A stretch of 64,000 bases of DNA, from contig NC_092383.1 in the NCBI RefSeq assembly GCF_030028105.1, forward strand, positions 97,177,604 to 97,241,603. Reading direction: 5' to 3'. The position numbers and the translations under genes are program-made. Positions 10,233 through 60,282 of the stretch are shown one piece after another. The notes under the pieces are model-generated. The model searched no databases. It saw only the letters and a list, made by a program, of their open reading frames with translations, and had not been told where the DNA came from. How positions within the stretch are numbered: the first letter of the stretch is position 1; each line of letters starts with the position of its first letter. This stretch comes from Mobula birostris. Its lineage: Eukaryota.

Positions 10233-10627
10233 TATTTGTCAACGTGGAGCAGAGAGTGAGTTTGTAAATCTGGTGGGAGCAAAGGATGTTGGGAATGGTG
10301 AGGGTGGAGCGCCGTGGGAGGGGTGTGGGACAGGTGGCAGAGAAGTGGTGCCAGGGGTGGGGGTTGGTGCGGGTGCAGATGCACCTAGCCCTGAGACACC
10401 AGGCAAGGTCATTGGATTCCAAACAATTGATTTACTGATCATTACAGAATGTCTCTTTGGTGCTTCCCCCTCCCTCCCCCTTTTCCCAAGCAAGATTCCC
10501 CTCTCCCTGCCCCCTTCCAACCCTCAGTCTACAATAGAGACCCATATCAGAATCAGGTTTATCATCACTCACATATGACATGATTTTGTTTTGCAACAGC
10601 AGTACAGTGCAATACAGAAAATTACTA

Positions 10628-10698
10628 CAGTACTGTGCAAAAGACTTAGGCACCCGAGCTATATTTACACATGTGCCCAAGACTTCTGCACAATATTG
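10628..10698. mobile_element. 71-bp Tc1/mariner-type MITE
   Basis: 26-bp imperfect TIRs (CAGTACTGTGCAAAAGACTTAGGCAC / GTGCCCAAGACTTCTGCACAATATTG), 19-bp spacer, TA on both sides. Confidence 0.8.
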
Positions 10699-11027
10699 TA
10701 TCAACGAAGAACTGTAAGCTGTCACTTATCTTAAGAGCACTCACAATTCCTTGCGCTCACCTCCTGGGTCCCATTTTCCATGTCTGTGCTCTCATGTTTC
10801 CCTACAGCAGGGTTCAGCTTCCTTCCTCAGGGCCGGGTGCGAAGAGTCTTCACACTGCTCCTCCCTTGGGCTCACTGTGTGATGAAGGGACAGTGCACCA
10901 GCTCTTTCACTGGGCTGGGAGCTGGAAGATGAGCCACATGGCCTGCTCTGATATTGGTGATGTCACAGCTCTGACTCCCCTCCAGTTGTTGAGCTCAGCT
11001 ACTGACCATTTCCCTTTGTCTCCACAG

Positions 11028-11348
11028 CAAGTACTGGGGCTTCCCCTCCTACTGTGCATGGAGTTCGGGGCCAGATGGCCTGGTTATCTTCTGGGATCCC
11101 AATTCCATGGAACCTTACGGAGATTGAGTGGAACCGAGTATCACCCCGAATCAGGATCATGAAGTACTCGAGAGGCGGTTTTGAATACTTTGGTACTGTT
11201 GAGGACAGGCGACGAATAACTATTTTCCCCATAGACTTCAGTCTGTTAATCCGTAATCTACGAGCAGAAGATGCTGGTGATTATGAGATGACCATGAGAA
11301 CACATCCGAGAGAAGGGACTTATTCAACAGTGCGACTGGAGGTATATG
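11028..11348 (+). CDS. CD2/SLAM-family Ig V-set exon (gene 1), no cysteines
   Basis: Acceptor ttgtctccacag, donor G|gtgagt, 321 bp, phase 1-1; TVHGVRGQMAWL...EW...FSLLIRNLRAEDAGDYEM...TVRLEVY has the V-set D-x-G-x-Y motif and lacks the B-F disulfide, as in CD2-family N-terminal domains. Confidence 0.92.
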
Positions 11349-12329
11349 GTGAGTGAGACATCACTGAGGGGCCCGGGTTTCACCAGTTCCTGAAACACCC
11401 CCAATTAATGGGTGAGGGCAGATCCTGTGTGTTTCCCTGTTTACTGAACCCCACTGACTGCCGGTGTCCAGAGCTGGGCTCACAGTCCCAGTGTAGTGAG
11501 GCTGAGTCAGTGAGAGTCTGGAGGACACACTCACCACATCCCCAGAGACCAGGAGGCATGAAGGATTGAACCATCAATGGGGGACCTTGTGTATCCAAAA
11601 CTCCAGGAGTTGAGCACATGTGGAGCAGGGGGAGATAAACCGATGGGGTGGAAAAGGCTGATGTGAATGGGCTGAGGGGTCTGTATCTGTGGGTCACAGT
11701 TACACACTGTATCCCCAGGTCAAAGGCCTGGTCTGTCATGTTCAGGGATCCCAGCTGACCTGTCAGTTTCCCAGGCGACTACTTGTTAATTCCCCAGACT
11801 GAGGTCTGAGCTCAGCAAGGTGTTTATTCCTCAGCCTTCATGCTGTGCTGAGTGAGACCCTGTGTATTCATTACACTGAATATAATGTCCCAGTGAGTGA
11901 CACAGTACACGGACACAACAGCACACACACACAGCAATATGGTTCCTGACTCACTCTAACAGTAATATCACATTCACAATAATCTCACTCAGCATTGCCT
12001 GGCTGAGAAATCTTCTCTATCCCAGGGTTAACTATTATATGAAGTACATCAGAACATGGGAAATAGGGCCAAGAGGAGGCCATTCAGCCCATCCAACCTT
12101 TCCTCACTCACTGGGGTCAGAGCTGGGATATAGGCTCAAGGGTTAAATGCTCACCCACATCATGGGAAGCTTCCTGTACTTCCGTTCCTTGTGTGCCTAT
12201 CCAGTTACCTCTGAAGCCCTCAGTGCAATTGAGCAGGGCTACCCCCTGTGGGAACAAATCCCACATTCCCAAAGCTCCATGGGGAAGGTATTTTCTTCTA
12301 GACTCCACATTGGATTTATCATTGTGTCA

Positions 12330-12595
12330 TCAGTGATCATAAGAGCAGAATCAGGCCATTTGGCCCATCGAACCTGTTCCACCATTTCGTCATGGCTGAT
12401 CTATTTCCCTCTCAGCCACAGTCTCCTGCCTTCCCCCTTATTCCTTCATGCCCTGACCAGTCAAGAATCTATCAACATCTGCCTTAAATATACATAAAGA
12501 CTTGGCCTCCACAGCAGCCAGTGGCAAAGAATCCCACAGATTCACCACCCTCTGGCTAAGAAAATTCCTCTTTACCTCCATTCTAAAAGGACACC
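12330..12595 (-). mobile_element. CR1 3' fragment
   Basis: Minus translation MEVKRNFLSQRVVNLWDSLP plus CR1-type 3' UTR. Confidence 0.8.
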
Positions 12596-12909
12596 AAACG
12601 GTTATGGGAAGAACATACAAATTGCTTACACATAGCAGCGGGGTTGCTAACCGTTCCGCCATCGGGCGGCCCCCGCTGTGGTTCTGATGATGGCTATACG
12701 TCTCCAGCAGGACAGACTGGTCACAGGGAGGATAATGGAGGGAGGGGGGCAAGCAGAGAGTTGGTGTGCCGTGTGGGGGGAGGGGAGGGGAGGGGTAGTG
12801 AGGGCACTGGGGTCCTGGGGTGGGTGGGGTGTGGAATGGGTCCTGTCTGTCCCATTTCTTTGGGAGGCAGTCACTGAGTTTTTTTTCTCCTCCCCAACTG
12901 CGAAACCAG

Positions 12910-13019
12910 AATTACCAGGATGGGGGATAGCTCTGTTCGTCATCGTGGCTCTGGTCAGTGTGATGGTCGTGGTCAACATCGTTGTCCTCTGGAGGAGAAC
13001 AGCGGGACTGACACCGTAA
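12910..13019 (+). CDS. Transmembrane exon with in-exon stop, probable exon of gene 1
   Basis: Long pyrimidine tract then ccag|AA, phase 1; ELPGWGIALFVIVALVSVMVVVNIVVLWRRTAGLTP*; donor gtgagt at 13031. Link to the V exon is inferred from phase and order. Confidence 0.72.
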
Positions 13020-13263
13020 TATCTGTACTCGTGAGTACCCGCAGGGGAAGCGGGGAGTGGTCAGGGAGAAGGCATTGGCGAGAGTAGCATTGGATGAGTA
13101 CACAGGAAGGGGTTTGAGTGTGACAGAGAAGAGGGTGCGGCAGAGAGGGTAGGGGTGTAGGGGTGGGAGTGGGGAGAAGGAGGGGAAGGGAAATGAGCCG
13201 TTCAAAGAGAGGGCTGCGTGGCACAGACCAGTGCACACTTTCACAGAGCCAATGTCCTCGTAC

Positions 13264-16739: not shown

Positions 16740-17306
16740 TATATTAAATATATAAGAGAGATGAGAGTAGAAGTAGCATCACTAGAAAATGAGACCGGAG
16801 GTATAATAACAGGAGAAAGAGGTAGCGGTAGAGATTGTGGAGACATTGGTAATAATCTCTCAGGAATCATTGGACCCTGGCACCGTTCCGGAGGACTGGA
16901 AAATTGCAAAAGTCACTCCACTCTTTAAGAAAGCAGGGAGGCAGCAGAAAGGAAATTATAGACCAGTTAGCCTGATCTCAGTGGTTGGGAAGATGTTGAA
17001 GTCAATAGTTAAGGATGAGGTTATAGAGAACTTGATGACACAGGACAAATTAGGACAAAGTCAGCGTGGTTTCCATAAGGGAAAATCTTCACTGACAAAC
17101 CTGTTAGAATTATTTGAAGAGATTACAGGTAGGATAGATAAAGGGGAGGCAGTATATGTTGTATATTTGGATTTTCAAAAGGCAATTCATAAGGTGCCAC
17201 GCATGAGACTGCTTACCAAATTAAGAGCCCATGTCATTGCAGGAAAGTTACTGGCATTTGCGGATTGATAGCAGGTAGTGAGTGGGAATAAAAGTATCCT
17301 TTTCTG

Positions 17307-17578: not shown

Positions 17579-18659
17579 GGTTGGCTGCCAGCGACCAGTG
17601 GTGTTGTGCAGGGGTCGGTATTGGAACCACTTCTTTTTATGCTGCATATAAATGATTTAGATGATGGAATAGATGGCTTTGTTGCCAAGTTTACAAATGA
17701 TACGAAGATTGGTGGAGGGGCAGGTAGTGTTGAGGAAACAGAAGGGATGCGAAAGGATGTAGACAGATTAAGAGAATGGGCAAGAAGGTGGGAAATGAAA
17801 TACAATGGTCATGGTCATGCATTTTGGTAGTAGAAGAAAATGTGCAGAACTTGAGATGGAAAGGGACCTGCGAGCCCTTGTGCAGAACATCCTAAAAGTT
17901 AGCTTGCTGGTTGAGTTGTGGTGCGGAAGACAGATGCAGTGTTAGAATTCATTTCAAGAGGTCTAGAATTACAAGAGCAGGGATGTGATGCTGGGGCTTT
18001 ATAAGGCACTGGTAAGGCCTCACCATGAGTATTGTGAACAGTTTTGGGCTTCTTATCTGAGAAAAGATGTGCTAGCAATGGAGTGGGTTCAGAGGAGGTT
18101 CACATGGATGATACTAGGAGTTAAAGGATTATCTTATGAGGAACGTTTGATGCCTCAGGGTCTGTACTCACTGGAATTTAGAAGGATGAGGTGGGATCTC
18201 ATTGAAATCTTTTGAATGTTGGAAGGTCAAGACAGAGTAGATGTGGAAAGGATGTTTCCCATGATGGTGGAGTCTAGGACAAGAGGGCACAGCTTCAAGG
18301 TAGAGGGCCATCCATTTAATACAGAGCTGCAGAGAATTTTTTTCAGCCGGAGAGTGGTACATTTGTGGAATTTGTTACCACAGGCAGCTGTGGAGGCCTG
18401 GTCACTGGGTGTATTTAAGGCAGAGATTGATAGGTTCTTGATTGGCCATGGCATCAAAGGTTACAGAGAGAGGGTGGGGGAGTGGGGCTGGTGGGGGGTG
18501 GGGGGGAAGAAAAGGATCAGCCGTGATTGAATAGCAGTGCAGACTCAATGGGTCAAAAGGCCTAATCCTGCTCCTATGTTTTATGGTCTAATGGTCTTAT
18601 TGTAACAAAAACATCCACATGCACAAATTACCCAGGACTGAGACACACCATCACGAGTG

Positions 18660-19522
18660 TACTATGTCCCCCGAAACCCAGTCACTGGGGTAAACCATCC
18701 CCGACACATCTCACCACAGGATACACTGTCCCCACACACCCAGTCACTGGGTACACTGTCCCCACACTCTCAGTCACTGGGTTACACTTTCCCACATACA
18801 CCCAGTCACTGGGGTACACTGTCCCCCCCCACACACCCAGTCACTGGGGTACACTGTCCCCCCCCACACACCCAGTTACTGGGGTACACTGTCCCCCATA
18901 CACACCCTGTCACTGGGGTACACTGTCCCCCACACACACCCCATCACTGGGGTACACTGTCCCCCACACACACCCCATCACTGGGGTACACTGTCCCCCA
19001 TACACACCCCATCACTGGGGTACACTGTCCCCCACACACACCCCATCACTAGGGTACACTGTCCCCCATACACACCCCATCACTGGGGTACACTGTCCCC
19101 CATACACACCCCATCACTGGGGTACACTGTCCCCCACACACACCCCATCACTGGGGTACACTGTCCCCCATACACACCCCATCACTGGGGTACACTGTCC
19201 CCCACACACACCCCATCACTGGGGTACACTGTCCCCCACACACACCCCATCACTGGGGTACACTGTCCCCCACACACACCCCATCACTGGGGTACACTGT
19301 CCCCCATACACACCCCATCACTGGGGTACACTGTCCCCCACACACACCCCATCACTGGGGTACACTGTCCCCCATACACGCAGTCACCGGGGTGCACTGT
19401 CCCCCACACACACCCCATCACTGGGGTACACTGTCCCCCATACACGCAGTCACCGGGGTGCACTGTCCCCCACACACCAAATCACTGGGATTCACTGTCC
19501 CAGACACCCAGTCACTGGGGTA
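18660..19522. repeat. 34-bp C-rich minisatellite, about 25 copies
   Basis: Unit CACTGGGGTACACTGTCCCCCACACACACCCCAT; homogeneous core with diverged edges. Confidence 0.95.
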
Positions 19523-20387: not shown

Positions 20388-23300
20388 GAGAGGTTTATGG
20401 AGATAGGGAGGGGTATAGGGGTAGAGAGGTTTACGAAGATAGGGAGGGATATAGGGGTAGAGAGGTTTACAGAGAGGGAGGGGTATAGGGGTAGAGAGGT
20501 TTACGGAGATAGGGAGGGTTATAGAGGTAGAGAGGTTTATGGTGATAGGGAGGGGTATAGGTGCAGAGAGGTTTACGGAGATAGGGAGGGGTATAGGGGT
20601 AGAGAGGTTTACGGAGATAGGGAGGGGTATAGAGGTAGAGAGGTTTATGGAGATAGGGAGGGGTATAGAGGTAGAGCGGTTTACAGATAGGGAGAGGTAT
20701 AGGGTTAGAGAGGTTTACAGAGATAGGGAGGGGTATAGGGGTAGAGAGGTTTACGGAGATAGGGAGGGGTATAGGGGTAGAGCGGTTTACGGAGATAGGG
20801 AGGGGTATAGGTGTAGACATGTTTACGGAGATAGGGAGGGGTATAGGGGTAGAGAGGTTTACGGAGATAGGGAGGGGTATAGGGGTAGAGAGGTTTACGG
20901 AGATAGGGAGGGGTATAGAGGTAGAGAGGTTTACGGAGATAGGGAGAGGTATAGGGGTAGAGAGGTTTACGGAGATAGGGAGGGGTATAGGGGTAGAGAG
21001 GTTTACGGAGATAGGGAGGGGTATAGGGGTAGAGAGGTTTACAGAGATAGGGAGGGGTATAGGGGTAGAGAAGTTTACGGAGATAGGGAGGGGTATAGGG
21101 GTAGAGAGGTTTACGGAGATAGGGAGGGGTATAGGTGCAGAGAGGTTTACAGAGATAGGGAGGAGTATAGGGGTAGAGAGGTTTATGGAGATAGGGAGGG
21201 GTATAGAGGTAGAGAGGTTTACAGATAGGGAGAGGTATAGGGTTAGAGAGGTTTACGGAGATAGGGAGGGGTATAGGGGTAGAGAGGTTTACGGAGATAG
21301 GGAGGGGTATAGGAGTAGAGAGATTTATGGAGATAGGGAGGGGTATCGGGGTAGAGAGGTTTACAGGGAGGGAGGGGTATAGGGGTAGAGAGGTTTACGG
21401 AGATAGGGAGGGGTATAGGGGTAGAGAGGTTTACGGAGATAGGGAGGGGTATAGGGGTAGAGTGGTTTACGGAGATAGGGAGGAGTATAGAGGTAGAGAG
21501 GTTTACGGAGATAGGGAGGGGTATAGAGGTAGAGAGGGTTATGGAGATAGGGAGGGGTATAGAGGTAGAGAGGTTTACAGAGATAGGGAGGGGTATAGGG
21601 TTAGAGAGGTTTACGGAGATAGGGAGGGGTATAGGGGTAGAGAGATTTATGGAGATAGGGAGGGGTATAGGGGTAGAGAGGTTTACAGAGAGGGAGGGGT
21701 ATAGGGGTAGAGAGGTTTACGGAGATAGGGAGGGGTATAGGGGTAGAGAGGTTTACGGAGATAGGGAGGGGTATAGGGGTAGAGAGATTTATGGAGATAG
21801 GGAGGGGTATAGGGGTAGAGAGGTTTACAGAGAGGGAGGGGTATAGGGGTAGAGAGGTTTACGGAGATAGGGAGGGGTATAGGGTTAGAGAGGTTTACGG
21901 AGATAGGGAGGGGTATAGAGGTACAGAGGTTTACGGAGATAGGGAGGGGTATAGGGGTAGAGAGGTTTACGGATATAGGGAGGGGTATAGGGTTAGAGAG
22001 GTTTACGGAGATAGGGAGGGGTATAGGGGTAGAGAGATTTATGGAGATAGGGAGGGGTATAGGGGTAGAGAGGTTTACAGAGAGGGAGGGGTATAGGGGT
22101 AGAGAGGTTTACGGAGATAGGGAGGGGTATAGGGGTAGAGAGGTTTACGGAGATAGGGAGGGGTATAGGGGTAGAGAGATTTATGGAGATAGGGAGGGGT
22201 ATAGGGGTAGAGAGGTTTACAGAGAGGGAGGGGTATAGGGGTAGAGAGGTTTACGGAGATAGGGAGGGGTATAGGGTTAGAGAGGTTTACGGAGATAGGG
22301 AGGGGTATAGAGGTACAGAGGTTTACGGAGATAGGGAGGGGTATAGGGGTAGAGAGGTTTACGGATATAGGGAGGGGTATAGGGTTAGAGAGGTTTACGG
22401 AGATAGGGAGGGGTATAGAGGTACAGAGGTTTACGGAGATAGAGAGGGGTATAGGGGTAGAGAGGTTTACGGATATAGGGAGGGGTATAGGGGTAGAGCG
22501 GTTTATGGAGATAGGGAGGGGTATAGGTGTAGAGATGTTTACGGAGATAGGGAGGGGTATAGGGGTAGAGAGGTTTACGGAGATAGGGAGGGGTATAGGG
22601 GTAGAGAGGTTTACGGAGATAGGGAGGAGTATAGAGGTAGAGAGGTTTACGGAGATAGGGAGGGGTATGGGGTAGAGAGGTTTACGGAGATAGGGAGGGG
22701 TATAGGGGTAGACAGGTTTACGGAGATAGGGGGGGTATAGGGGTAGAGAGGTTTACAGAGATAGGGAGGGGTATAGGGGTAGAGAGGTTTACGGAGATAG
22801 GGAGGTGTATAGGGGTAGAGAGGTTTACGGAGATAGGGAGGGGTATAGAGGTAGAGAGGTTTACGGAGATAGGGAGGGCTATAGGGGTTGAGAGGTTTAC
22901 AGAGATACGGCGGGGTATAGGGGTAGAGAGGTTTACGGAGATAGGGGGGGTATAGGGGTAGAGAGGTTTACGAAGATAGGGAGGGTTATAGGGGTAGAGA
23001 GGTTTACGGAGATAGGGAGGGGTATAGGGGTAGAGAGGTTTACGGAGATAGGGAGGGGTATAGGTGTAGAGAGGTTTACGGAGATAGGGAGGGGTATAGG
23101 GGTAGAGAGGTTTACGGAGATAGGGAGGGGTATAGAGGTAGAGAGGTTTACGGAGGTAGGGAGGGGTATAGAGGTAGAGAGGTTTACGGAGATAGGGAGG
23201 GGTATAGAGGTAGAGAGATTTACGGAGATAGCGAGGGGTATAGGGGTAGAGAGGTTTACGGAGGGGTATAGGGGTAGAGAGGTTTACGGAGATAGGGAGG

Positions 23301-24380
23301 GGTATAGAGGTAGAGAGGTTTACAGAGGTAGGGAGGGGTATAGGGGTAGAGAGGTTTACGGAGATAGGGAGGGGTATAGGGGTAGACAGGTTTACGAGAT
23401 AGGGAGGGGTATAGGGTTAGAGAGGTTTACAGAGAGGGAGGGGTATAGGGGTAGAGAGGTTTACGGAGATAGGGAGGGTTATAGGGGTAGAGAGGTTTAT
23501 GGAGATAGGGAGGGGTATAGGTGTAGAGAGGTTTACAGAGAGGGAGGGGTATAGGGGTAGAGAGATTTACGGAGATAGGGAGGGTTATAGGGGTAAAGAG
23601 GTTTACGGAGATAGGAAGGGGTATAGGGGTAGAGAAGTTTATGGAGATAGGAAGGGGTATGGGGGTAGAGAGGTTTACAGAGAGGGAGGGGTATAGCGGT
23701 AGAGAGGTTTACGGAGATAGGGAGGGGTATAGGGTTAGAGAGGTTTACGGAGATAGGAAGGGGTATAGGGGTAGAGCGGTTTATGGAGATAGGGAGGGGT
23801 ATAGGGGTAGAGAGGTTTACGGACATAGGGAGGGGTATAGGGGTAGAGAGGTTTACGGAGATAGGGAGGGGTATGGATTAGAGAGATTTATGGAGATAGG
23901 GAGGGGTGTAGGGGTAGAGAGGTTTACGGAGATAGGGAGGGGTATAGGGGTGGAGAGGTTTATGTAGATAGGGAGGGGTATAGGGGTAGAGAGGTTTACG
24001 GAGATAGGGAGGGGTATAGGGGTAGAGCGGTTTATGGAGATAGGGAGGGGTATAGGGGTTGATAGGTTTACGGACATAGGGAGGGGTATAGGGGTAGAGA
24101 GGTTTACGGAGATAGGGAGGGGTATGGATTAGAGAGGTTTATGGAGATAGGGAGGGGTGTAGGGGTAGAGAGGTTTACGGAGATAGGGAGGGGTATAGGG
24201 GTGGAGAGGTTTATGTAGATAGGGAGGGGTATAGGGGTAGAGAGGTTTACGGAGATAGGGAGGGGTTTTGGGGTAGAGAGGTTTACGGAGATAGGGAGAG
24301 GTATAGGGGTAGAGAGGTTTACGGAGATAGGGAGGGGTATAGTGGTAGAGAGGTTTACGGAGATTGGAAGGGGATAGAGG
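20388..24380. repeat. 36-bp G/purine-rich minisatellite, about 110 copies
   Basis: Unit GAGATAGGGAGGGGTATAGGGGTAGAGAGGTTTACG with 34- and 35-bp variants. Confidence 0.97.
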
Positions 24381-26040: not shown

Positions 26041-26260
26041 CCATAAGACCATAAGACAAAGGAGCAGAAGTCGGCCATTCGGCCCATCGGGTCTTCTCCA
26101 CCATTTTACCATGAGCTGATCCATTCTCCCATTCAGTCCCACTGTCCTGCCTTCTCACCATAACCCTTGATGCCCTGGCTACTCAGATACCTATCAATCT
26201 CTGCCTTAAATACAGCCAATGACTTGGCCTTGGTTGACAGGAGAGACCCCAACTTTCCCT
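26041..26260 (-). mobile_element. CR1 3' end
   Basis: (CCATAAGA)2 tail followed by CR1 3' UTR in reverse orientation. Confidence 0.8.
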
Positions 26261-34210: not shown

Positions 34211-35063
34211 CACAGAACAATCAGTGTTGCTTGGCAGCTGCCGGGATATTGTGCCATCTTTTGGGAAAGGTCTTGCAGTCCTATTGTTTCAAGGAATGGT
34301 TCCATAGTTTCCCGAAATAAATGGGCAGGCACAGGCCCCCTCCGGTCCTAATCCTGCATCATTCTCTCCCTACTGGTTTCACTTTACAGTCTCTTTATCT
34401 CACCACCCTCAAATCCCACTCCTTTATTTTCCCTTCCTCTCTTTCCTCCAATCTCCAAATCCACCCGTCTTCCCAACTGCCCCAATCTGTCTCCCACCTG
34501 CACCAGCTCCCTTGTCGTCCTCTCACTGTGTCTCACCTGCTCTGCTCCAGGTCCGTGTATCTCACCACCTCAGATCCCCTGTGCTTCCCCGATGAACCCA
34601 CTCCTTTCTCTGCCTCCTGCCTTCCCTCACTCTGCCCACCCTCCCTGCGACCCCTCCCAGTATATTCTTCCCTCCCTCCCCCTCCCCCCCAGATTTTCAT
34701 GCTCTCCTTCTCTTGCCCCTTCGATCACTCCGAGTATCCTCACACCTCTCCGCATCCACACTCCATACCTTTCCCTCCTCTCCACTCTCCTGCCTCCTCT
34801 CCTTCCCTCTGACCTTTGACATCCCCTCCTCCACTGTCCACCCCCAACTGTCCCTCTGCCTTCCTCCCTCCGTATTCCATACCTCATCCCCTCTGCCTTC
34901 CATTCAACTGACCCACCCATCTGTGTGTGGTGGTGGGGGGTCCGAACAGGAGACAGGAGAGGCAGGTAGGGAGAGGGAGGGAAGGGGAAGAGAGGAATGA
35001 GGAGGGAAGAGTGGAGAGGAAGAGGATGATGGGGATGGGGAGAAGGGAAGAGGTGACGGGGAG

Positions 35064-35113
35064 TCATTCGGCCTTGTGGAGTCTGCCTTCTGCTCCGGTG
35101 CCTGGGCGGGAGC
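35064..35113 (-). CDS. Cassette A cytoplasmic exon (SSRPGTGAEGRLHKAE*)
   Basis: Acceptor ctctgtcccccacag, phase 1, open to TGA; conserved in copy B. Confidence 0.75.
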
Positions 35114-35704
35114 CTGTGGGGGACAGAGGAGAGATGTCAGTTCACCCTGTGAGGGGTCTGAGGTTTCAATTACTTTCTCATCACACTAGGACCTCTTCAC
35201 TGCTGAGGGCAATGTCATGTGGTCTCTCTTGTCTGATCTGGAAGAAAACTCTCTCCCTCTCCCAGTCTCAATGTCTCAAGTCTCAAGTCTCCATATCCCC
35301 CCTTGTGGTTTGTATCTTGTATTGTCCTGGACTTTACATCTCCCCCTTCCCTATTTTTATATCTTCCTCTTTAGAACTGCATATCCGCATGTTCCCAATC
35401 TCCACATTCCACCATCCCTCTGTCCTTATCCCAAACCCCTGGTCCCTGTTATACTCGTTCAGATTAAACGAGGAGTGAACGATGAAGAGTGCAGAGTCTG
35501 GGACAAGAGCGATTCAGAGAACTGAGGTGGAAGAGATTGAGAGATCTGGGACAGTGGAGGTGGATGGGATTCAGAGTCACAGGGGGGTGGGATTGACAGA
35601 CTGAAACGGGGATTTTAAACACCGGTCTGAATCCACCCCTCACTGTTGACACTACCCTTCAGAACAACAGATTTTCACTGGAAACACACAAAAACAGTTC
35701 TCAC

Positions 35705-35803
35705 TGATAACGTGTACGGCGACTGTGACTGAGAGCAGAATCAGGAGCAGGACGGCAATGATTGTGGCCCTCAGCCGACATCCACAGAGACAGCTTCTCT
35801 CCG
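35705..35803 (-). CDS. Cassette A stalk/TM exon (AERSCLCGCRLRATIIAVLLLILLSVTVAVHVI)
   Basis: NAGNAG acceptor, donor A|gtgaga, 99 bp, phase 1-1, 20-residue hydrophobic run; conserved in copy B. Confidence 0.85.
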
Positions 35804-36029
35804 CTGCTGAAAGAGAGAGGATCACGGATTATATAGACGGTACCAGGCCTTCTCCAGCCCCACCTTCCCAACACTGACTAACATCACAAACCCATGGACA
35901 TCACTGTCCCATCACACACATTCAGGGCAGGGATTAAATACAAAGTAAAACTCTCTAAGTCCAATCATACCCTGCTGGGCTACAAGTCAGGTACTGGATT
36001 ATGCTAGTTTCTCATTACACACTATCCTG

Positions 36030-36905: not shown

Positions 36906-36943
36906 TCAACATTATAATTCCAATTCCTGCCCCAGACACTCGC

Positions 36944-48299: not shown

Positions 48300-48349
48300 T
48301 CATTCGGCCTTGTGGAGTCTGCCTTCTGCTCCGGTGCCTGGATGGGAGC
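48300..48349 (-). CDS. Gene B cytoplasmic exon (SSHPGTGAEGRLHKAE*)
   Basis: Acceptor ctctgtccccccacag, phase 1, stop at 48300-48302. Confidence 0.75.
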
Positions 48350-49649: not shown

Positions 49650-49937
49650 CAGACTTGTCCAGTTTACAGAAATCCCCCAGCCGGATCTGAGCTGTGTCCA
49701 CACTGATGGTGTTCCTGGCCTCACATCTGTACACAACAGCTTCGCTCTCTGCAGTGCGATGAACCTTCAGTGTCTCTCCGTGTCCCCAGAGGTGATGGGT
49801 TCTGTCGTTCACCACAGCTTCTCGTCCCCTCCACCATCTGAAGCTGGTGTGGTCACCAGAGGTCACAGAGCAGGTCAGGGTAAGCTCACAGGTCCCAGTG
49901 ATGTTCTGAACTGTGATGTGTGTTTCTGACACCGGCT
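49650..49937 (-). CDS. Gene B CD2/SLAM-type Ig C2 exon
   Basis: Four-Cys C2 domain, 288 bp, canonical G|gtgagt donor; NPVS changed to NTIS. Confidence 0.92.
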
Positions 49938-52900
49938 CTGGGTCTGGATGAAGAGATAAAAGATGAGCAAAGGAGATCTTCATGAACACTCGATCCGCCC
50001 CCCACTGTCTCTGACAGTCCTAAATATGGTTTAAGCCAATCTCAAATCATTTCCACCCACCTGTTTAACCCTTCCCTCAGCATTCAGTTCAGTCAGTTGC
50101 TGCTGGAGGAAGTTCCCACGTGTTCTGTGCCCTCTTTCCCGACCACGCCCCGCACATTTCCATAAGAAATCCCCAGTATCCTATTTATGGTTCTGTAGCC
50201 CAGCAATTCTCTCCAGTTCACAACTGTTGTCACTGTTGTAACTGGCCCCAATGTCCCTTTGACACCTGAGTGTGTCCCACCCGGACCAGCCGGAATCTGG
50301 TCCAAGAGCAGCAGCCCTGGGACTGTGATCGACACAGACCCAGACTGGGACTGTCTGGTGAAACTGGCACTGTTCAGATCCTGGGTACACAGCCTCTTCA
50401 CCACAGAGCCACTCATTAACACACAGATCGGGGTGGAACCAGTAAGTTAATTCCAGTCTGGTGATGGGACACATTCTGGAAACAAAGTGTCAGAATGGGG
50501 AGTCAGTCACTGAGACAGTGCTGGGATCTGGGGCGAAAGATTCACCCTCGCTGTAAGCAGAGACAGATTAATATGGTGATGAACAGCAAACCAATCAAAA
50601 GATTCTCAGACTGAACAAAGAAACAAAGGACCAGCATTAAAATCGGACTGCAAATATAATCACAGGTGATAACAATGAACTAAGATAAGCGAATAGGGTG
50701 GGCAGGAAGGAGTTGACCTTCTCATCTCTGCCTCCCTCTGGTGGCCGGTCCGAGGTTGACAGTTGGTTTCTGCAGAGCCATCGACTGCCCACTACCTGGA
50801 ACCTTGAATGGGCAACTTGGGAAGGACGCAAGCAAACGGACCAGGAGATCCCCTGAACAACCCACCACCACTCGCACTTTGGGTGTCTGAAGTTCCGGAG
50901 TGTGAGGCTGAAGCGGAGCCAAAACTGGATGAGACCCACGGACTGATACACAGAGTCATCCCAACCACAGAAAGGGAGAACAACGTGGGTGCCCGTAAAC
51001 TGTCTTAGGAATCCGTTGCCCGGTACTGCTCTTTGCAATACTCTCCACCCCAGGACCCCAGTGTAAAGGGGCAGGACCCACACACAGAGAGAACTCCACT
51101 GGGCACTATCCTCGCTACTGAATCACAATTAGTTTCATTATTTTTCTTTCTTTTCAAATCTCCCGGGGTATTGGGAAAGGGGCCCCCGGGGTACTGGGAA
51201 AGGGGCTGGTTTGGGTCCGGAGGAACCGACCTGGCTGCAGACTGTGTTGCTACCTTCTACTCAGGAAGCTTCAAAGTTGGTGCAGTATAATCGTGCGAGA
51301 TTGTCTCGGACATTTCACTTGTGATTCATCAGTTCAGGGTCAGGGACATAACCTCCTCAGCCATCAGGGAGAGCACAGTTTCCCAGATACCATAGAGGCT
51401 GGAGGGCCAACACCTCCAGCCACTGCTTTCACAAAGACCCCAATTGTCATATTTGGCTATGCAGGGCTTTTCTGTCCGTTTTTTCAAACCAACATCCTGA
51501 AAGGTGACATGGCCACAGGATTAACCGGTACTGTAGAACAGTGGTTGGATCTGACACTGTCAGTCATTTGGCTCACTATGTCTTTCATTGCCCACTCTAG
51601 CCTCTTCTGTCTTTTCCTCAGCCACCTGTCAGCTCCCCCTGCTGTCCCTCCTTCTTCCCTTTCTCCCATGGTCTGTTTCCTCTCCTGTCAGATTCATTCT
51701 TCTCCAGTTCTTTACCTTCCCCGCACACCTGGGTTCACCTGTCTCCTCTAGCTAGCCCTCCATCCCTGACCACCACCCCCATCTTTTTATCTGTGGTATT
51801 CTCCCTTCAATTCCAATTCTGAAGAAGGGTCTTCCTCTCCATAGATGCTGCCTGAGCTGCAGAGTTCCTTCAGCATTTTGTGTGCGTTGCTCTGGATTTC
51901 CAGCATCTGCAGAATCTCATGGATGAGTATCAATATGATGTTGTTTTTATCACTGACACCACCAATTACTGCAGAATCCCAGACAACATGGCAATTACAC
52001 GGTAGAACCAATCACAGAGATGGGAAAATGAGACTGAAGACAGGAACACAAGGGACATGTCGGTGATCTCTCTACACTGACCCTGCAGCTTGGGAGAGGC
52101 TCCTTCACCCAGGTCAGTTGGAGCCTCTTGAATGTTCAAGAAGTTGACAGACATGTCTGCACCAGTAAAACTGGGCAAGTGACCGGGGTAAGGAGGGAGC
52201 TCTCCAGTTGGACCAATTATGTCGCTTTCAGTCACAGATCCCTTCAGTCTGTCATCCTCACACCCAGTATCTTCCACTGTCCACTCAGGAAAGTGTCTCC
52301 TTGCAAATAAATCTTCCTTTCTTTCAGTTTTGTCCTTCAGGGAGGCAAGAGGAACCAAAATGGTGAAGTAGTGGAAAGGATCTCCAGTTTCAAGGTTTTG
52401 TGGATGAACATCACCGAGGAGCTCCCTTGGTCCATCAACATAACCTCGACAGTAGAGAAGGCACAACAGTGACTACACTATCCAAGGTGCTTAAGGAGAG
52501 CTAATCTGCCCCAAAGATTCAATTCATTTCAAGCTTAATTGTCATTCGACCTGACATGAATCCAGCCAAACGAAACAGCATTACTCCAGGGTCAAGGTGG
52601 AAAACACAGTACAACAGTCACACAGTAAAACAGTAAACCCCACGGCTTGAGACCCTGAGTGCATTGAATGCCATCAGAATCTGCAGTCAACAACAACAGA
52701 GCTTGTCTTCTGCCAAGTGAAGGTCAGGGAGGGCAGCACCGACTCTGTCCTGGACGCCGCACCACACCGCCCCCTATGGACCACACCGGCTTTGACGCCT
52801 CTCTCCTGGCGGCTGCAAACAGGTGACACCGTGGCTTGAGGCCTGGATCTCGCTACGAGCAAGGTCATGTGGTTCTGCCGACATTCACTCCTGCTCCCCT

Positions 52901-53935: not shown

Positions 53936-54963
53936 TACACAGGGTCTCACTCAGCACAGCACAGCATGAAGGCTGAGGAATAAACACCTTGCTGAGCTCA
54001 GACCTCAGTCTGGGCAATTACCAAGCAGCGCTTTGAGAAACCTATGGAATATCTGGAGTCCATGTACATGACAGACCAGGCCTTTGACTGGGGGTTACAG
54101 TGGGATCTGTTGAACTGTGACCCACAGATACAGAACACTGATAAGGATGAAGTCCTGAGGCTTCATTAGACATTGGTCAGACCGCACTTGGAGTATTGTG
54201 AGCGGTTCTGGGTCCCTTATCGAAGAAAGGATATGCTGGCACTGGAGGGGGTCCAGAGGAGGTTCTCAGGATTTGTTTAAGGAATGAAAGGATTAACACA
54301 TGAGGAAAATTGAATGGCTCTGGGGCTGTACTCACTGCAATTTAGCAGTATGAGTCAGGGGGAATCTTATTGAAAGCTTTCAAATATTAAAAAAGCCTTG
54401 TTAGAGTGGATGTGGAGAAGATGTTTCCTGTAATGAGAGAGTCTGGGACCAGGGGCCACAGCCTTCGAATAGAGGCACATTCATTTAGAACAGAGGTGAG
54501 GGAATTCCTGTAGCCAGAGTGTTGTGAATGTGTGGAATTCATTGTCACAGAATGCTATGGAGGCCACCATTTGGTATATTTGAAGTGAAGGTTCATGGGT
54601 TCTATATTAGTCAGGGCATGAAAGGTTACAGAGAAGGCAGGAAAATGGGGCGAAGAGAAGTAATAAATCAGCTATGATTGAATGGTGGGGCAGAATCGAT
54701 GGGCCGAATGGCCTAATTCTGATCCTTTATCTTATGGTCTATACCGCTGAGCCCAACCACTCCAGCCCCCTCCTACCCCATCAACCTACCCCCCTCATTC
54801 CCTACACCCTGTGTGCTCAGCTCCTCCAGTCTCAGAGCCACATGGACTTTGCTGGTGAATCCTTCACAGCCTCTGGTTCAGTCTCCGGGGATGTGGTGAA
54901 TGTGTCCCCCAGACTCAGCCACAATACACTGGGACTGTGAGCCCAGATCTGGCCACAGACAGT

Positions 54964-57939
54964 TAGAATCAGAATCAGGTTTATTATCACCGGCATGTGA
55001 TGTGAAATTTGTTAACTTAGTGGCAGTGAGAAAAGGACATGCCCTGGGTGCTGGAGGTCTTTAATAATAGACGCTGCCTTTCTAAGACACTGCTCCCTAA
55101 AGATGTCCTGGGTACTTTGTAGGCTAGTGCCCAGGATGGAGCTGACTAGATTTACAACATTCTGCAGCTTCTTTCAGTCCTGTGCAGTGGCCTCTCCATT
55201 CCGGACAGTGATGCAGCCTGTCAGATTGCTCTCCACAATACAACTATAGAAGTTTTTGAGTGTATTTATTGACATGCCAAAACTCTTCAAACTCCTGATA
55301 AAAGTATAACTGCTGTCTTGCCTTCTTTATGACTGCATCAATATGTTGGGACCAGGTTAGATCCTCAGAGATGTTGACACCCAGGAACTTGAAGCTGCTC
55401 ACTCTCTCCACTTCTGATCCCTCTGTGAGGATTGGTATGTGTTCCTTCATCTTACCCTTCCTGAAGTCTACAATCAGCTCTTTCATCTTACTGACATTGA
55501 GTACCAGGTTGTTGCTGTGGCACCACTCCACTAGTTGGCATATCTCACTCCTGTACGCCCTCTCGTCACCACCTGAGATTCTACCAACAATGCTTGTATC
55601 ATCAGCAAATTTATAGCTGGTATTTGAGCTATGCCTAGCCACACAGTTTTTATATATATATGAGAGAGAGAGAGAGTTAGAGAGAGAGAGTTAGAGAGAG
55701 AGAGTTAGAGAGAGAGAGTTAGAGAGAGAGAGTTAGAGAGAGAGAGTTAGAGAGAGAGAGTTAGAGAGAGAGAGTTAGAGAGAGAGTGAGAGAGAGAGAG
55801 TGAGAGAGAGAGTGAGAGAGAGATTAGAGCAGTGGGCTAAGCACACACACCTGAGGTGCGCCAGTGTTGATTGTCAGCAAGGAGGAGATGTTATCACCAA
55901 TCCGCACAGACTGTGGTCTTCCAGTTTGGAAGTTTAGGATCCATTTGCAGAGAGAGGTTCAGAGGCCCAGGTTCTGCAGCTTTGCAATCCGGATTGCAGG
56001 AATGTTGGTATTAAATGCTTGGTTAGAGTCGATGAACAGCATCCTGATGTAGGTGTTTGTGTTCTCTAGGTGGTCTAAAGTCGTGTGGAGAGCCAATGAG
56101 ATTGCGTCTGCTTTTGACCTATTGTGGCGCTAGGCAAATGGCAACGGGTCCAGGTCCTTGCTGAGGCAGGAGTTCAGTCGAGTCATGACCAATCTCTCAA
56201 AGCATTTCATCACTATTAATGTAAGTGCAGCCTGGCGATAGTCACTAAGGCAGCTCACATTATTCTTCTTTGACACTGGTATAATTATTCCCTTTTTGTA
56301 GCAAGAGGGAACTTCTGCCTGTAGCAGTGAGAGGTTCAAAATATCCTTGAATACTCCCGCTATTTGGTTGGCACAGGTTTTCAGAGCCTTACCAGGTACT
56401 CCATCGGGACCTTCTGCCTTGTGAGGGTTCACTCTCTTTTGAGACAGTCTAACATCGGTTTCTGAAACAGAGATCACAGGGTCATCAGGTGCAGCAGGGA
56501 TCTCCACAGCTGTAGTTGTGTTCTCCCTTTCAAAACGTGCATGGAAGGCGTTGAGTTCATCTGGTAGTGAAGCATCGCTGCCATTGGGTTTCGCTTTGTA
56601 GGAAGTAATGTCTTGCAGTCCCTGCCAGAGTTGCCGTGCATCTGATGTCACCTCCAACCTCGTTCGAAATTGTCTCTTCACCCTTGAAATAACCCTCCAC
56701 AAATCATACCTGGTTTTCTGGTACAGGCCTGGGTCGCCAGACTTGAATGCACAGATCTAGTCTTCAGCAGACACTGTACCTCCTGGTTCATCTGTGGCTT
56801 TTGGCTTGGGAATGTACAGTAAGACTTTGTGAGCACACACTCGTCCACACAGGTTGAAATGAGGTCGGTAACAAATGCAGCATATTCAACCAGATTCAAA
56901 AATGAATCCCTGAATACAGTCCAGTCCACCGATTCAAAGCAGTCCTGTAGGCGCTCCTGTGCTTCCCTTGTCCAAACCTTCTTGGTCCTCACTACTGGTG
57001 CTGCAGTCTTCAGTCTCCGCCTGTACTCAGGGAGTAGAAGTACAGCTACGTGATCAGATTCCCGAAGTGAGGACGTGGATTAGCACGGTAGGCATTCTTG
57101 ATGGTGGTGTAACAATGGTCCAGTGTGTTGTTTCCTCTGGTGTTGCAAGTGACCTGTTGATGGGAATTGCTTTGTGATTTTTTTTCAGACTGGCCTGGTT
57201 AAAATCTCCCAAAACGATGGTGAAGGTGTTAGGGTGCGCTGTTTCGTGCATGTTGATCCCATTGCTCAGATCATCTAAAGCCTGATTGACACTGGCCTGA
57301 GGTTTAATGTAAACTGTTACCAGAATGACCCCAGAGAACTCCCGTGGTGGGTAAAAATGATGACACTTTACTGCTAGATATTCCAGGTCTGGAGAGCAGA
57401 ATTGGGACGGCACTGATATATTTGTGCACCAAGAAGAACTGATCATGAGGCAAACTCCTCCACCTCTGCTTTTGAGAGACTCTATAGACCAATCCTGGCG
57501 GTGAAGAGTAAACCCGTCCATCTGAATCACTGCATCCGGTAGGGAAGGGGTTAACCAGGATTCCGTGAAACAAAGGACACACGCGGTCCTAATGTCCCTC
57601 TGATCCAACACCCTGGCTCTGAGATCATCGCAGCTATTCACCAGAGACTGCACGTTCGCCAGCAAGGCCGTCAGTCTGGGGAGTTTAAAACCCCGTTTCA
57701 TTAAACTCACTTGTAATCCTGATCTTCACTCACGCTTCCTCCGAGGTTTTCTCCGTGGGCACTTCCGACCACAGACTGTTTTTTCCCGTCGGTTTTAAGC
57801 AGCAATAGTTCATTTAAACGCATTAAGACAGCTTTGTTGACTGTACTGACCTTGGAAGCAGTTGTGCTGGCTGAAACGGGAATATTTAATCGTATCCATT
57901 GGGAGTTCTGCTGCTACTTGAGTCGCCCCTAGTATGTTG
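54964..57939 (-). mobile_element. Near full-length Rex1/Babar LINE in the V-C2 intron of gene B
   Basis: APE endonuclease ORF (LANVQSL, CFTESWL, GGGVCLMI, LGDFN), RT pieces (KAEGPDGVPG, KFADDT), (GATTCT)n tail at 54964; host intron continues on both sides. Confidence 0.95.
55645..55826. repeat. (GAGAGAGAGTTA)n microsatellite inside Rex1 RT
   Basis: About ten 12-bp units plus (GA)nGT variants. Confidence 0.95.
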
Positions 57940-58047
57940 CAGTGGGGTTCAGTAAAAAGGGGGACACACAGGATCTGCCCTCACCCATTAATTAGGAATG
58001 TTTCAGGAACTGGTGAAACCCGGGCCCCTCCGCGGTGTCTCACTCAC

Positions 58048-58371
58048 CGTACACCTCCAGTCGCACTGTTGTTATACTTTCAGCTCCTGAAACTGCTGCT
58101 GCAAACATCACCTCGTAATCACCGGAGTCCTCTCTCCGTAGATCATGGATTTCCAGACTGAAATTCCCACGATGAAAGGTTCTCCGTCGCTTGTACTCGT
58201 CAGGACCGAAGTAGCTAACGTTACCCTTCGAGTACTTCACTATCATGTTTCTGGGTGATACCCATCTCCACACAACATCAGCAACGTCCAGTCCGACTGG
58301 GATCCCAGAAGGTAAGGAGACCGAGTGTCCCCGAGTTCCGTTCACGGTGGTCGGGGAAGCCCCAGTCCCAG
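58048..58371 (-). CDS. Gene B CD2/SLAM-family Ig V-set exon, no cysteines
   Basis: Acceptor ttgtctcctcag, donor G|gtgagt, 324 bp, phase 1-1; FSLEIHDLRREDSGDYEV...TVRLEVY; N-glycosylation sequons NGT, NVS, NFS. Confidence 0.93.
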
Positions 58372-58694: not shown

Positions 58695-58905
58695 ACTGTG
58701 AGTGAACTCGGGATAAATGAAACAACAGTGCGACTGGAGGTGTACGGTGAGTGAGACACCACAGAGGGGCCCGGCTTTCACCCATTCCTGAAACACCCCT
58801 AACTACTGGGTGAGGGTAGATCCTGTGTGTTTCCCTGTTTACTGAACCCCAGTGACTGCCCATGTCCAGAGCTGGGCTCACGGTCCCAGTGTAGTGAGGC
58901 TGAGG
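58695..58905 (+). pseudogene. Remnant of a third V exon (TVSELGINETTVRLEVY), its donor and the start of the intron
   Basis: Exon end at 58746, GTGAGT donor, then about 160 bp homologous to the post-V introns of genes 1 and B; in-frame TGA at 58689 and no V body upstream. Confidence 0.85.
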
Positions 58906-60282
58906 GTGCGAGTGGGTGGAGGGATAGAAGGGGCTTTGAGTGTATGTATCCTAATCATAAAGGTTACAGGACAGGTGAATAAGGGGTTAAACAGACAGAT
59001 GGCTTTCTTTAACTGAGACACACGGAGTATGAGATTGCGACAGGACACTGGAACGGTGGCCAACCGCAGTTTGAACACAGTTCGACACTGAGATGAGTAT
59101 GTTCACCACATCCCAGGACAGACCGGGTCACTCTTGGAGAGGGTGAAGGGGGAATTTACCAAACTGTTGCAGGGCTTGGAACATTATTATTGAGAGGAAA
59201 GATCAGAGAGTCTGGGTTGCTTTTGCTTGGAACAGGGGATATCGAGCAGGAGACTATGGAGGGTGCAAAATAACAAGGGGCCTGAGCAGAGTAAATGGGA
59301 AGGAGGGATTTCCCTGAGCAGAGGGCTGGAGATTCACAGACACTGTGAATGATGAGTTGCAATGTCAAAGAGAGACAAAATCTTGATGAATACAGGACTG
59401 AAGGTGTTATATTTGAATGCACGCTGTATATGGAATAAGGTAGATGAACTTGCAGGATAGTTACAGATTGGCATTTATGATGTTGTGGACATCACTGAAT
59501 CAGGGCTGAAAGAAGATTATAGCTGGGAGCTGAACATCCCAGCACACATTGTGTCAAAAGGGCAGGTAGTCAGGCAGAGGGGGTGGGGTAGCTCTGTTGG
59601 TAAGAAATGAAATCAAGTCATTAGGAAGAGGTGGTATAGGATCAGAAAGTATAGAATCATTTCGGGTAGAGCAAAGAAACTGCAAGGGTAAAAAGATCCT
59701 AATGGAAGTTATATACAGACCTACAAACAGCAACAAAGATGTGAGCTACAGATTACCATGGAAAATGCACATCAAGAGGGCAATGTTACAACAATCATGG
59801 GGAATTTCAATGTGGACTTTTATCAGGAAAATCAGATTGGTGCTGGAACCCAAGAGGGGGAATTTGTAGAATACCTACAATATGGCTTTTTAGGGCAGCT
59901 TGTGGTTGAGTCCACTAGGGGTATTCTGGATTGGGCATTGTGCACTGAACCAGAATTGATAGCGAGCTTAAGGTAAAGATCTCCTTCAGGAGCAGTGATC
60001 ATAATATAATAGAATTCACCCTGCAGTTTCAGAGAGAGAAGCTAAAGTCAGATGTATCAGTATTACAGTGGAGTAACGGGAATTTCAGAGGCGTGAGGGA
60101 GGAGCTGGCCCAAACTGATTGGAAGGGTCTCTAGCAGGGATGACAACAGAGCAACACTGGCTGGAGTTTCTGAGAGGAAATTGGAAGTTCTGGATATATA
60201 CATCCCAACGAAGAAATCTTCCAAAGGCAGGATGAAGCAACTGTGGGTGAAAGGGAATTCGAAGCCAACATAAAAACCGAAG

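What the first reader, a model, noticed from the sequence alone, without database searches (positions are those of the whole stretch)
11028..11460. V exons diverge far more than their adjacent intron, with changes clustered in loops
Seen: V of gene 1 and V of gene B share about 50% amino acids by hand alignment, while the first 108 nt of the following intron differ at only about 9 positions. Differences cluster in blocks: IPWNLTEIE/VGLDVADVV, GFE/NVS, IFPID/FHRGN, and the F-G segment MTMRTHPREGTYS/VMFAAAVSGAESI, with a third F-G version TVSELGINE at 58695. The terminal TVRLEVY is invariant. Inference: diversifying selection on a ligand-binding face, or gene conversion homogenising the exon end and intron.
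Basis: partly seen in the sequence, partly recalled or inferred. Interest (0 to 1): 0.7.

Follow-up and report, generated by a model that had tools for sequence, protein, structure and literature searches.

The report
Conserved intron element beside fast-evolving V exons

Summary
The two V exons share 48% of amino acids and 64% of nucleotides in the exon body.

The cause is broader than either reading offered. A discrete block of about 225 nt (window 11325-11549) is multi-copy in three ray genomes, at about 25-40 times single-copy contig depth. It follows V exons of the same CD2/SLAM-like family in sawfish (93%) and skate (74-77%). It is absent from a zebra-shark gene. Between manta gene B and the sawfish gene it diverges 6.8%, against dS of about 0.19 and 16.5% in other intron parts. 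That indicates purifying selection on a non-coding element.

Gene 1 has a short branch in the block but a long one in the exon and upstream intron. This also points to recombination or gene conversion.

V exon bodies evolve at omega about 0.7-1.2. The ligand-binding sheet side is higher (0.8-1.3) and the G strand lower (0.1-0.45). Diversifying selection is plausible but unproven.

The "third F-G version" is an isolated copy of the block, not a V exon.

The parts
11028..11348 (+). Gene 1 V exon (cysteine-less V-set, CD2/SLAM type), phase 1-1
   Evidence: The translation is open across 106 codons. Pfam V-set E = 1.9e-7. AlphaFold pLDDT is 91 and the top Foldseek hits are 2B4, CD48 and CD84. It is single-copy at 80% or more likeness in three ray genomes.
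11325..11549 (+). Conserved junction block, gene 1 copy: last 24 nt of the exon (G strand TVRLEVY), the splice donor, and the first ~200 nt of the intron
   Evidence: It is 92% identical to gene B, 89% to the isolated copy, 90-93% to sawfish and 76-77% to skate. Summed contig depth is 25-40 times single-copy in runs X1, X5 and X9. No ORF is conserved and variable sites show no 3-periodicity. There is no Rfam hit and no fold signal.
11437..11475 (+). Most conserved core of the block (CTGTTTACTGAACCCCACTGACTGCCGGTGTCCAGAGCT)
   Evidence: It is nearly invariant in manta, sawfish and skate copies.
10818..10920 (+). Upstream-intron segment shared by gene 1 and gene B only (85%), mildly multi-copy
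   Evidence: Identity. Depth is 2-8 times single-copy. It does not align with the sawfish locus.
12910..13019 (+). Gene 1 transmembrane exon (ELPGWGIALFVIVALVSVMVVVNIVVLWRRTAGLTP, then stop), in frame with the V exon
   Evidence: It scores as the strongest hydrophobic segment in the window and has an acceptor with a long pyrimidine tract. No RNA support was found.
58048..58371 (-). Gene B V exon, a typical family member
   Evidence: It is 92% identical at amino-acid level to Mobula birostris 'CD48 antigen-like' XP_072133953. It departs from the family consensus at 0 of 29 conserved sites.
57940..58071 (-). Block copy of gene B, first part, interrupted by a LINE insertion
   Evidence: It is 91.7% identical to gene 1 over 132 nt. 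A LINE ORF lies at 57057-57725 on the minus strand.
54880..54966 (-). Block copy of gene B, continuation after the LINE insertion
   Evidence: Aligned pieces are about 92% identical, with a 10-nt deletion.
58723..58922 (+). Isolated third copy of the block with no V exon body, inverted relative to the gene B copy ~650 nt away
   Evidence: It is 89% identical to gene 1 over 200 nt. Its upstream flank is unrelated to V exons.
49660..49938 (-). C2 exon most likely used by gene B. The TM exon lies at 49034-48936 and the tail exon at 48347-48303.
   Evidence: tblastn with family proteins gives 63-85% identity.

Best explanation
The window lies in a CD2/SLAM-like receptor gene cluster of a manta-ray-like genome.

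First, a discrete non-coding element of about 200-225 nt sits at the 3' junction of the V exon. It covers the G-strand codons, the splice donor and the first ~200 nt of the intron. It is under purifying selection. It accompanies the family's V exons in dozens of copies per manta genome, and in the sawfish and skate genes examined. It evolves about three times more slowly than synonymous sites. The likeliest role is a cis-acting RNA-level signal that controls use of the V-exon splice donor. These genes have very long, transposon-filled introns and many alternative isoforms. This role is inferred. A transcriptional enhancer is the main alternative.

Second, the V exon bodies evolve at about the neutral rate (omega ~1). 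Most change falls on the CD2/SLAM ligand-binding sheet, and the G strand is kept. Gene 1 is an extreme, possibly decaying or re-purposed, V-TM member.

Recombination or gene conversion among paralogues adds to the block's uniformity.
For: Shown:
- The block boundaries (about 11325 to about 11549) are the same in the gene 1/gene B comparison, in the isolated copy, and in the paralogous contigs.
- Copy number. Summed contig depth in the block is 79-97 against 3-4 in X1, 288-400 against ~10 in X5, and 400-494 against ~11 in X9. Six to 28 distinct contigs cover the variable sites. The majority letters are the same in all three species.
- Cross-order conservation directly after the V exon. Identities for upstream 100 nt / exon body / intron 1-110 / intron 111-200 are: gene B-sawfish .83/.83/.94/.84; gene 1-sawfish .74/.69/.93/.89; sawfish-skate .59/.66/.76/.86. 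The zebra shark shows none, at about .45-.5.
- For gene B versus sawfish, block divergence is 6.8% against 16.5% in other intron parts (P = 0.01), and dS is 0.18-0.20.
- Control. The intron downstream of the C2 exon is not conserved between manta and sawfish (.50).
- The block is not coding, not a known RNA, and has no significant structure.
- Family assignment rests on Pfam V-set, Foldseek hits to 2B4/CD48/CD84, and NCBI names such as CD48-like, SLAMF5/7/8/9-like and Ly-9-like.
- Family variability is higher on the GFCC'C'' side: 1.68 against 1.10 bits, P = 0.003.
- Gene 1 has a terminal branch of 0.88 against a median of 0.21.

Inferred:
- The splicing role. It rests on the fixed position and orientation next to the donor, with almost no indels over 110 nt across batoids. 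It also rests on the many isoform names and the 57-590 kb gene models.
Against: - No RNA evidence for gene 1 or for any role of the block. No listed RNA run holds the V exon.
- An isolated block copy without a V exon (58723-58922) is hard to reconcile with a purely donor-linked function.
- Only one locus each from sawfish, skate and shark could be fetched, so 'family-wide' outside manta rests on single genes.
- Copy number comes from summed contig depth, which is only semi-quantitative. The link of those copies to V exons is inferred from the three copies in this window.
- The manta-sawfish gene pair may be paralogous rather than orthologous.
- Elasmobranch substitution rates are low, and the rate contrast is about 3-fold, not extreme.
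Confidence: 0.65

Rival explanations
1. Pure concerted evolution. Repeated gene conversion or unequal crossing-over homogenises the exon end and the start of the intron among paralogues. The element has no function. Selection for diversity keeps conversion tracts out of the V body.
For: The block is multi-copy and highly similar. Gene 1's branch in the block is 0.03-0.045, against 0.24 in the upstream intron and dS 0.44 in the exon. Intron positions 111-200 show 9-10 differences where about 24 are expected (P ~1e-4). An isolated copy lies nearby in inverted orientation.
Against: Conversion cannot act between species, yet the manta-sawfish block identity (93-94%) equals the within-genome identity (92%). 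Block divergence is about one third of dS and of the other intron parts. The block is still 74-77% identical (intron 1-110) in a skate whose V exon is 59-66% identical.
Confidence: 0.15
2. The intron is the neutral yardstick. The V exon is driven far beyond it by positive (diversifying) selection on a ligand-binding face.
For: Omega is about 1 overall and 0.8-1.3 on the GFCC'C'' side in a domain with an invariant framework. The differences are clustered. Family variability concentrates on that face. Five of the six listed differences from the related species' contigs are non-synonymous.
Against: Exon-body divergence of 31-36% is about the same as non-block intron divergence of 26-38% for gene 1. 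Synonymous sites are as diverged as non-synonymous ones. The differences between gene 1 and gene B are not face-specific: 27/48 against 17/32. No omega estimate is significantly above 1. The block is slower than neutral rather than the exon being faster.
Confidence: 0.1
3. The block is a transcriptional enhancer or other DNA-level regulatory module shared by the family, not an RNA or splicing signal.
For: It survives as an isolated copy without an exon. A second conserved element lies 100-200 nt upstream of the C2 exon, 90% identical between manta and sawfish, and contains GGGAACTTCC, which fits the NF-kB consensus from my own knowledge. The core contains TGTTTAC, a forkhead-type motif from my own knowledge.
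Against: Its position and orientation relative to the donor are fixed, and it includes exon sequence. No chromatin or reporter data exist. The motif matches are recalled from memory, not tested.
Confidence: 0.2
4. The block is part of a transposable element or other dispersed repeat that happens to abut V exons.
For: Depth is multi-copy, and one isolated copy exists. Neighbouring intron segments (11672-12157 and 12320-12643) are repeats.
Against: All three copies in 64 kb sit in the SLAM-like gene context. The block starts inside the coding G strand and includes the donor at the same place in manta, sawfish and skate. Copy number of about 25-40 fits a gene family, against about 1e5 for the true repeat at 12320-12643. 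No terminal repeats, poly-A tail or ORF were seen.
Confidence: 0.04

Closest known systems
CD2/SLAM family receptors (CD48, 2B4/CD244, CD84, Ly-9, SLAMF8/9)
   Same: The N-terminal V-set domain lacks the canonical disulfide, and the best fold matches are 2B4, CD48 and CD84. Gene B and many relatives have a V-C2-TM layout. Relatives carry ITSM-like TxYxxV/I motifs (P0008: TVYANI, TVYAAV). The genes sit in a cluster.
   Different: This is a large batoid expansion with V-only, V-V-V and V-TM forms. Gene 1 joins the V exon directly to an unrelated TM exon and has no signalling tail. Sequence identity to mammalian members is only about 18-25%.
Multigene families with conserved introns and fast-changing exons, for example snake three-finger toxin genes (ASSET; PMC2474615, PMC2711939)
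   Same: Intron segments stay above 85% identical while exon segments differ in blocks, and the structural framework is kept.
   Different: Here only a discrete ~200-nt piece of the intron is conserved, and the rest diverges like the exon. The conservation also holds between orders of rays. Omega is about 1 rather than clearly above 1.
Conserved intronic flanks and intronic splicing regulatory elements of alternatively spliced exons (PMC1635713, PMC1877881)
   Same: About 100-200 nt of intron next to an exon is more conserved than neutral. The genes have many annotated isoforms.
   Different: Only the downstream flank is conserved, and the upstream 100 nt look neutral. The same element is shared by dozens of paralogous exons. 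Alternative use of these exons was not shown with reads here.
Intron homogenisation next to polymorphic exons in MHC genes (recalled from my own knowledge, not checked here)
   Same: Diverse ligand-binding exons sit beside uniform introns, with recombination or conversion as one cause.
   Different: That pattern is within a locus and a species. Here the uniformity spans paralogues and distant species, which needs constraint.

Membership tests
CD2/SLAM family | Membrane-distal V-set Ig domain without the canonical B-F disulfide | tested here: met
   Neither V exon contains a Cys. Pfam V-set E = 1.9e-7 and 3.4e-9. The top Foldseek hits are 2B4, CD48 and CD84, with TM 0.75-0.86.
CD2/SLAM family | Membrane-proximal C2-set domain following the V domain | tested here: inconclusive
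   For gene B, a C2 exon at 49938-49660 (-) is 63-85% identical to family C2 domains, but the splice link was not shown. For gene 1, no C2 exon lies between the V exon and the TM exon, so the feature is not met for gene 1.
CD2/SLAM family | Cytoplasmic ITSM (TxYxxV/I) or GPI/short tail | tested here: inconclusive
   ITSM-like motifs are present in the close relative P0008. The gene 1 tail is about 9 residues with no Tyr. The gene B tail exon has no Tyr.
CD2/SLAM family | Genes clustered in one chromosomal region | tested here: met
   Two V exons, two C2-TM modules and one V-TM gene lie in 64 kb. Earlier scan notes describe a cluster of more than 1 Mb. Those notes are unchecked.
Gene-conversion tract | The segment has a different (younger) history than its flanks | tested here: met
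   The gene 1 branch is 0.03-0.045 in the block, against 0.24 in the upstream intron and dS 0.44 in the exon. Binomial P is about 1e-4 for intron positions 111-200.
Gene-conversion tract | Paralogues within a genome are more alike than copies in different species | tested here: not met
   Gene 1-gene B is 92%, gene 1-sawfish 93%, and gene B-sawfish 94% in intron 1-110.
Conserved non-coding element under purifying selection | Between-species divergence significantly below neutral (synonymous or other intron) divergence | tested here: met
   6.8% against 16.5%, P = 0.01, with dS 0.18-0.20. Sawfish-skate gives 19.6% against 34-41%, P below 1e-3. One locus pair for each comparison.
Positively selected V domain | omega significantly above 1 at a class of sites | tested here: inconclusive
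   Pairwise omega is 0.7-1.2 for the whole exon and 0.8-1.3 on the GFCC'C'' side. Only five codon sequences were available and no site model could be run.
Flanks of alternatively spliced cassette exons | Both intronic flanks conserved, and alternative use seen in transcripts | tested here: not met
   Only the downstream flank is conserved. No RNA reads were found on the exon. Isoform names in NCBI records are the only hint.
Structured RNA / known RNA family | Rfam match, or stable conserved structure with covariation | tested here: not met
   No relevant Rfam hit. Fold z-score is 0.5. The RNAalifold covariation term is +1.75, with 3 of 63 pairs compensated.

The most novel reading that the evidence does not exclude
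The junction block would act together with the second conserved element ~100-200 nt upstream of the C2 exon. In that reading the two form a family-wide cis-acting system that decides which V exon is joined to which downstream module (next V, C2 or TM) across a cluster of more than 1 Mb. That would be a protocadherin- or Dscam-like way of making combinatorial receptor isoforms in rays. Alternatively, the two conserved flanks could serve as homology anchors for exchanging V-exon cassettes between paralogues.
Probability: 0.1. Interest if true: 0.8.

Novelty: new member of a known kind. Interest (0 to 1): 0.5.

Why it matters
The result changes the question. The exon is not diverging oddly fast. 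Instead, a short non-coding piece has been held nearly constant for what I take, from memory, to be well over 100 million years, next to dozens of rapidly changing immune-receptor exons.

This gives a concrete, testable candidate regulatory element, with a 39-nt core, for an undescribed ray-specific expansion of SLAM/CD2-like receptors.

It is also a caution. Introns next to such exons cannot be used as neutral yardsticks in tests for positive selection or gene conversion.

Tried and rejected
- The block as a coding extension or alternative exon. Every frame has stops in some copy, and variable sites show no 3-periodicity (20:17:17).
- The block as a known or structured RNA or mirtron. There is no Rfam hit, the fold z-score is 0.5, and there is no covariation.
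- Docking/selector-type base pairing between the block and the intron upstream of C2 or TM. Duplex energies lie within 0.6 sd of shuffles. The longest complementary run is 10 nt against a shuffle mean of 10.5. One apparent compensatory change between sawfish and skate is broken in manta.
- The fragment at 58695 as a decayed V exon. It has no similarity to V exons beyond the block.
- RNA support. No listed RNA run holds the V exon, and the one 'RNA?' run laid is probably DNA.
- The search for homologous proteins with the gene 1 V domain found nothing in its length range. That is uninformative.
- DNA for Mobula, Hypanus and Amblyraja, and for further Pristis loci, could not be fetched because files or gene ranges were too large. 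Three other proteins were not on record.
- The list of differences from the related species' contigs is truncated, with 305 rows hidden. I did not use it to compare exon and intron rates between species. I used only the 5:1 non-synonymous to synonymous count, as a weak hint.

Full report
**What is there**

The window is vertebrate DNA rich in LINEs and satellites. It holds two complete V-type exons. Gene 1 is at 11028-11348 (+) and gene B at 58371-58048 (-). Both are phase 1-1 with good splice sites and no cysteine.

Both exons match Pfam V-set. The best solved-structure sequence hit is SLAMF5/CD84. An AlphaFold model built on 46 family V domains has pLDDT 91. Its closest solved folds are 2B4, CD48 and CD84.

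A full HMMER search found a large family. NCBI names its members CD48-like, SLAMF5/7/8/9-like or Ly-9-like. They occur in Mobula, Hemitrygon, Hypanus, Pristis, skates, Narcine and some sharks. Gene B is 92% identical to a Mobula birostris protein. The genome is therefore manta-like, which agrees with earlier scan notes.

Gene 1's V exon is followed in frame by a TM exon at 12910-13019 with a 9-residue tail. Gene B most likely continues to a C2 exon (49938-49660), a TM exon and a tail exon. A second, 95% identical C2-TM-tail module lies at about 37.2-35.1 kb and has no V exon.

**The observation**

It holds as written. Amino-acid identity is 48%. From:
- exon body: 64.3% nucleotide identity
- last 25 nt of the exon: 92%
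- first 107 nt of the intron: 91.6% (9 differences)
- upstream intron: 78%

The three codon positions are equally diverged, at 62%, 68% and 62% identity. The amino-acid differences are clustered (P = 0.013). They sit in the BC loop and C strand, in C'', in the DE loop, and from the end of F to the start of G.

The 'third F-G version' is different. At 58723-58922 (+) only the block is present. The DNA before it is unrelated to V exons.

**The block is a discrete, multi-copy unit**

After removing a LINE inserted in gene B's intron (57939-54967), gene B's similarity to gene 1 continues at about 89% to about 11540 and then drops. The isolated copy ends at 11524.

I laid contigs of three ray genomes on 10700-13100 at 80% or more likeness. 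The V exon body is single-copy. The stretch 11325-11549 carries 25-40 times the single-copy depth:

| Run | Block depth | Single-copy depth |
|---|---|---|
| X1 | 79-97 | 3-4 |
| X5 | 288-400 | ~10 |
| X9 | 400-494 | ~11 |

Six to 28 distinct contigs cover the variable sites. Contigs break at the block. The majority letter at four sites is the same in all three species and differs from gene 1.

**The block is conserved between orders of rays**

Three loci could be fetched: sawfish (L001), zebra shark (L002) and little skate (L003). In sawfish and skate the same sequence follows the V exon. Identities:

| Pair | Upstream 100 nt | Exon body | Intron 1-110 | Intron 111-200 |
|---|---|---|---|---|
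| gene 1 - gene B | .72 | .65 | .92 | .89 |
| gene 1 - sawfish | .74 | .69 | .93 | .89 |
| gene B - sawfish | .83 | .83 | .94 | .84 |
| gene 1 - skate | .55 | .59 | .77 | .76 |
| sawfish - skate | .59 | .66 | .76 | .86 |

Against the shark the introns are at random level, about .45-.5.

For gene B versus sawfish, dS is 0.18-0.20. That matches the upstream intron and intron 111-200. The block itself (last 25 nt of exon plus first 107 nt of intron) differs at 6.8%, against 16.5% (P = 0.01).

As a control, the intron downstream of the C2 exon is not conserved between manta and sawfish (.50). Gene conversion cannot act between species. This roughly 3-fold rate reduction therefore indicates purifying selection.

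**What the block is not**

- It has no conserved reading frame and no codon periodicity.
- It has no Rfam match.
- It has no unusual stability and no covariation.
- It has no excess complementarity to the intron upstream of C2 or TM.

Its position and orientation next to the donor are fixed, with almost no indels across batoids. The most conserved core is 11437-11475.

**Recombination as a second factor**

In the exon and the upstream intron, gene 1 is the distant sequence. Its branch has dS 0.44 and dN 0.31, and the upstream intron gives about 0.24. In the block its branch is the shortest, at 0.03-0.045. In intron 111-200 it shows 9-10 differences where scaling from the flanks predicts about 24 (P ~1e-4). 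Uniform constraint does not produce this. A younger origin of gene 1's block, by conversion or recombination, does.

**Selection on the V exon**

- Omega is 0.69-0.86 for gene 1 versus gene B (bootstrap CI 0.43-1.14).
- It is 0.8-1.15 for gene 1 versus sawfish.
- It is 1.0-1.2 for gene B versus sawfish.
- Split by structure, the GFCC'C'' side gives 0.8-1.3, the ABED side 0.5-1.0, and the last eight codons 0.1-0.45. The GFCC'C'' side is higher than the ABED side in 9 of 10 pairs.
- Family-wide variability is higher on the GFCC'C'' side (P = 0.003). That side is the ligand-binding face in CD2/SLAM proteins, a point from established knowledge rather than a test here.

Diversifying selection on that face is plausible but not demonstrated.

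Gene 1 itself looks relaxed or re-purposed:
- Its tree branch is 0.88 against a median of 0.21.
- It breaks 7 of 29 well-conserved family residues, against none for gene B.
- Its differences from gene B are not face-specific.
- No RNA evidence was found for it.

**Comparison with known cases**

The pattern resembles toxin gene families with conserved introns and block-wise changing exons (PMC2474615). It also resembles conserved intronic flanks of regulated exons. It differs in three ways. Only one short, sharply bounded piece is conserved. Dozens of paralogous exons share it. It persists across ray orders.

I found no paper on SLAM-like expansions or this element in cartilaginous fish in two searches. 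That is not proof that none exists.

**Verdict**

The main new point is a conserved non-coding junction element of unknown function, most likely regulatory for splicing. An enhancer role and pure concerted evolution are the main rivals.

Noticed in passing
window 50039-50138 (-) and 37333-37432 (-); L001 about 17133-17232; L003 about 12473-12572: A second conserved intronic element lies 100-200 nt upstream of the C2 exon. It is 89-90% identical between manta and sawfish with no gaps and 81% between sawfish and skate, and it is absent in the zebra shark. It contains GGGAACTTCC, which fits the NF-kB consensus from my own knowledge. The flanks on both sides are only about 71-74% identical.
   Followed up: partly
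window 57940-58071 (-) and 58723-58922 (+): Two copies of the junction block form an inverted pair that brackets the gene B V exon and about 200 nt of its upstream intron. The outer copy has no exon of its own. Its origin is unexplained. Rearrangement at the block and a functional stand-alone copy are both possible.
   Followed up: partly
window 34328-38361 and 47569-51074: This is a 95% identical duplication carrying C2, TM and tail exons on the minus strand. The copy at about 37-35 kb has no V exon in the window. Intron remnants at 40476-42941 match gene B's intron.
   Followed up: partly
window 54967-57939: A LINE-type element on the minus strand, with an endonuclease/RT ORF at 57057-57725 and 55247-56756, is inserted inside gene B's copy of the conserved block and splits it.
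   Followed up: partly
window 12320-12643: This is a very high-copy short repeat, with summed contig depth around 1e5 in all runs. Copies also lie at 54484-54724, 62691-62877, 26062-26230 and 18334-18578.
   Followed up: no
window 11672-12157: This intron segment is multi-copy at about the same level as the block (15-25 times). It is found again in gene B's intron (54134-53924) and at 40607-40865 and 42081-42265. It is absent from the sawfish locus. It is probably a manta-lineage addition to the family's intron.
   Followed up: no
window 20388-24377 and 18722-19501: Two satellites: a 36-nt unit in 112 copies with strong G-over-C skew, and a 34-nt unit in 23 copies.
   Followed up: no
window 10625-10701: A palindromic hairpin matches mir-5879 on both strands, far below the gathering score (34.7 against 97 bits). 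It is probably a transposon hairpin.
   Followed up: no
NCBI gene models of the family (Mobula, Pristis, Amblyraja): Annotated gene ranges of 57-590 kb overlap other family genes and chain V exons from distant positions. This suggests either read-through splicing across the cluster or annotation artefacts.
   Followed up: no
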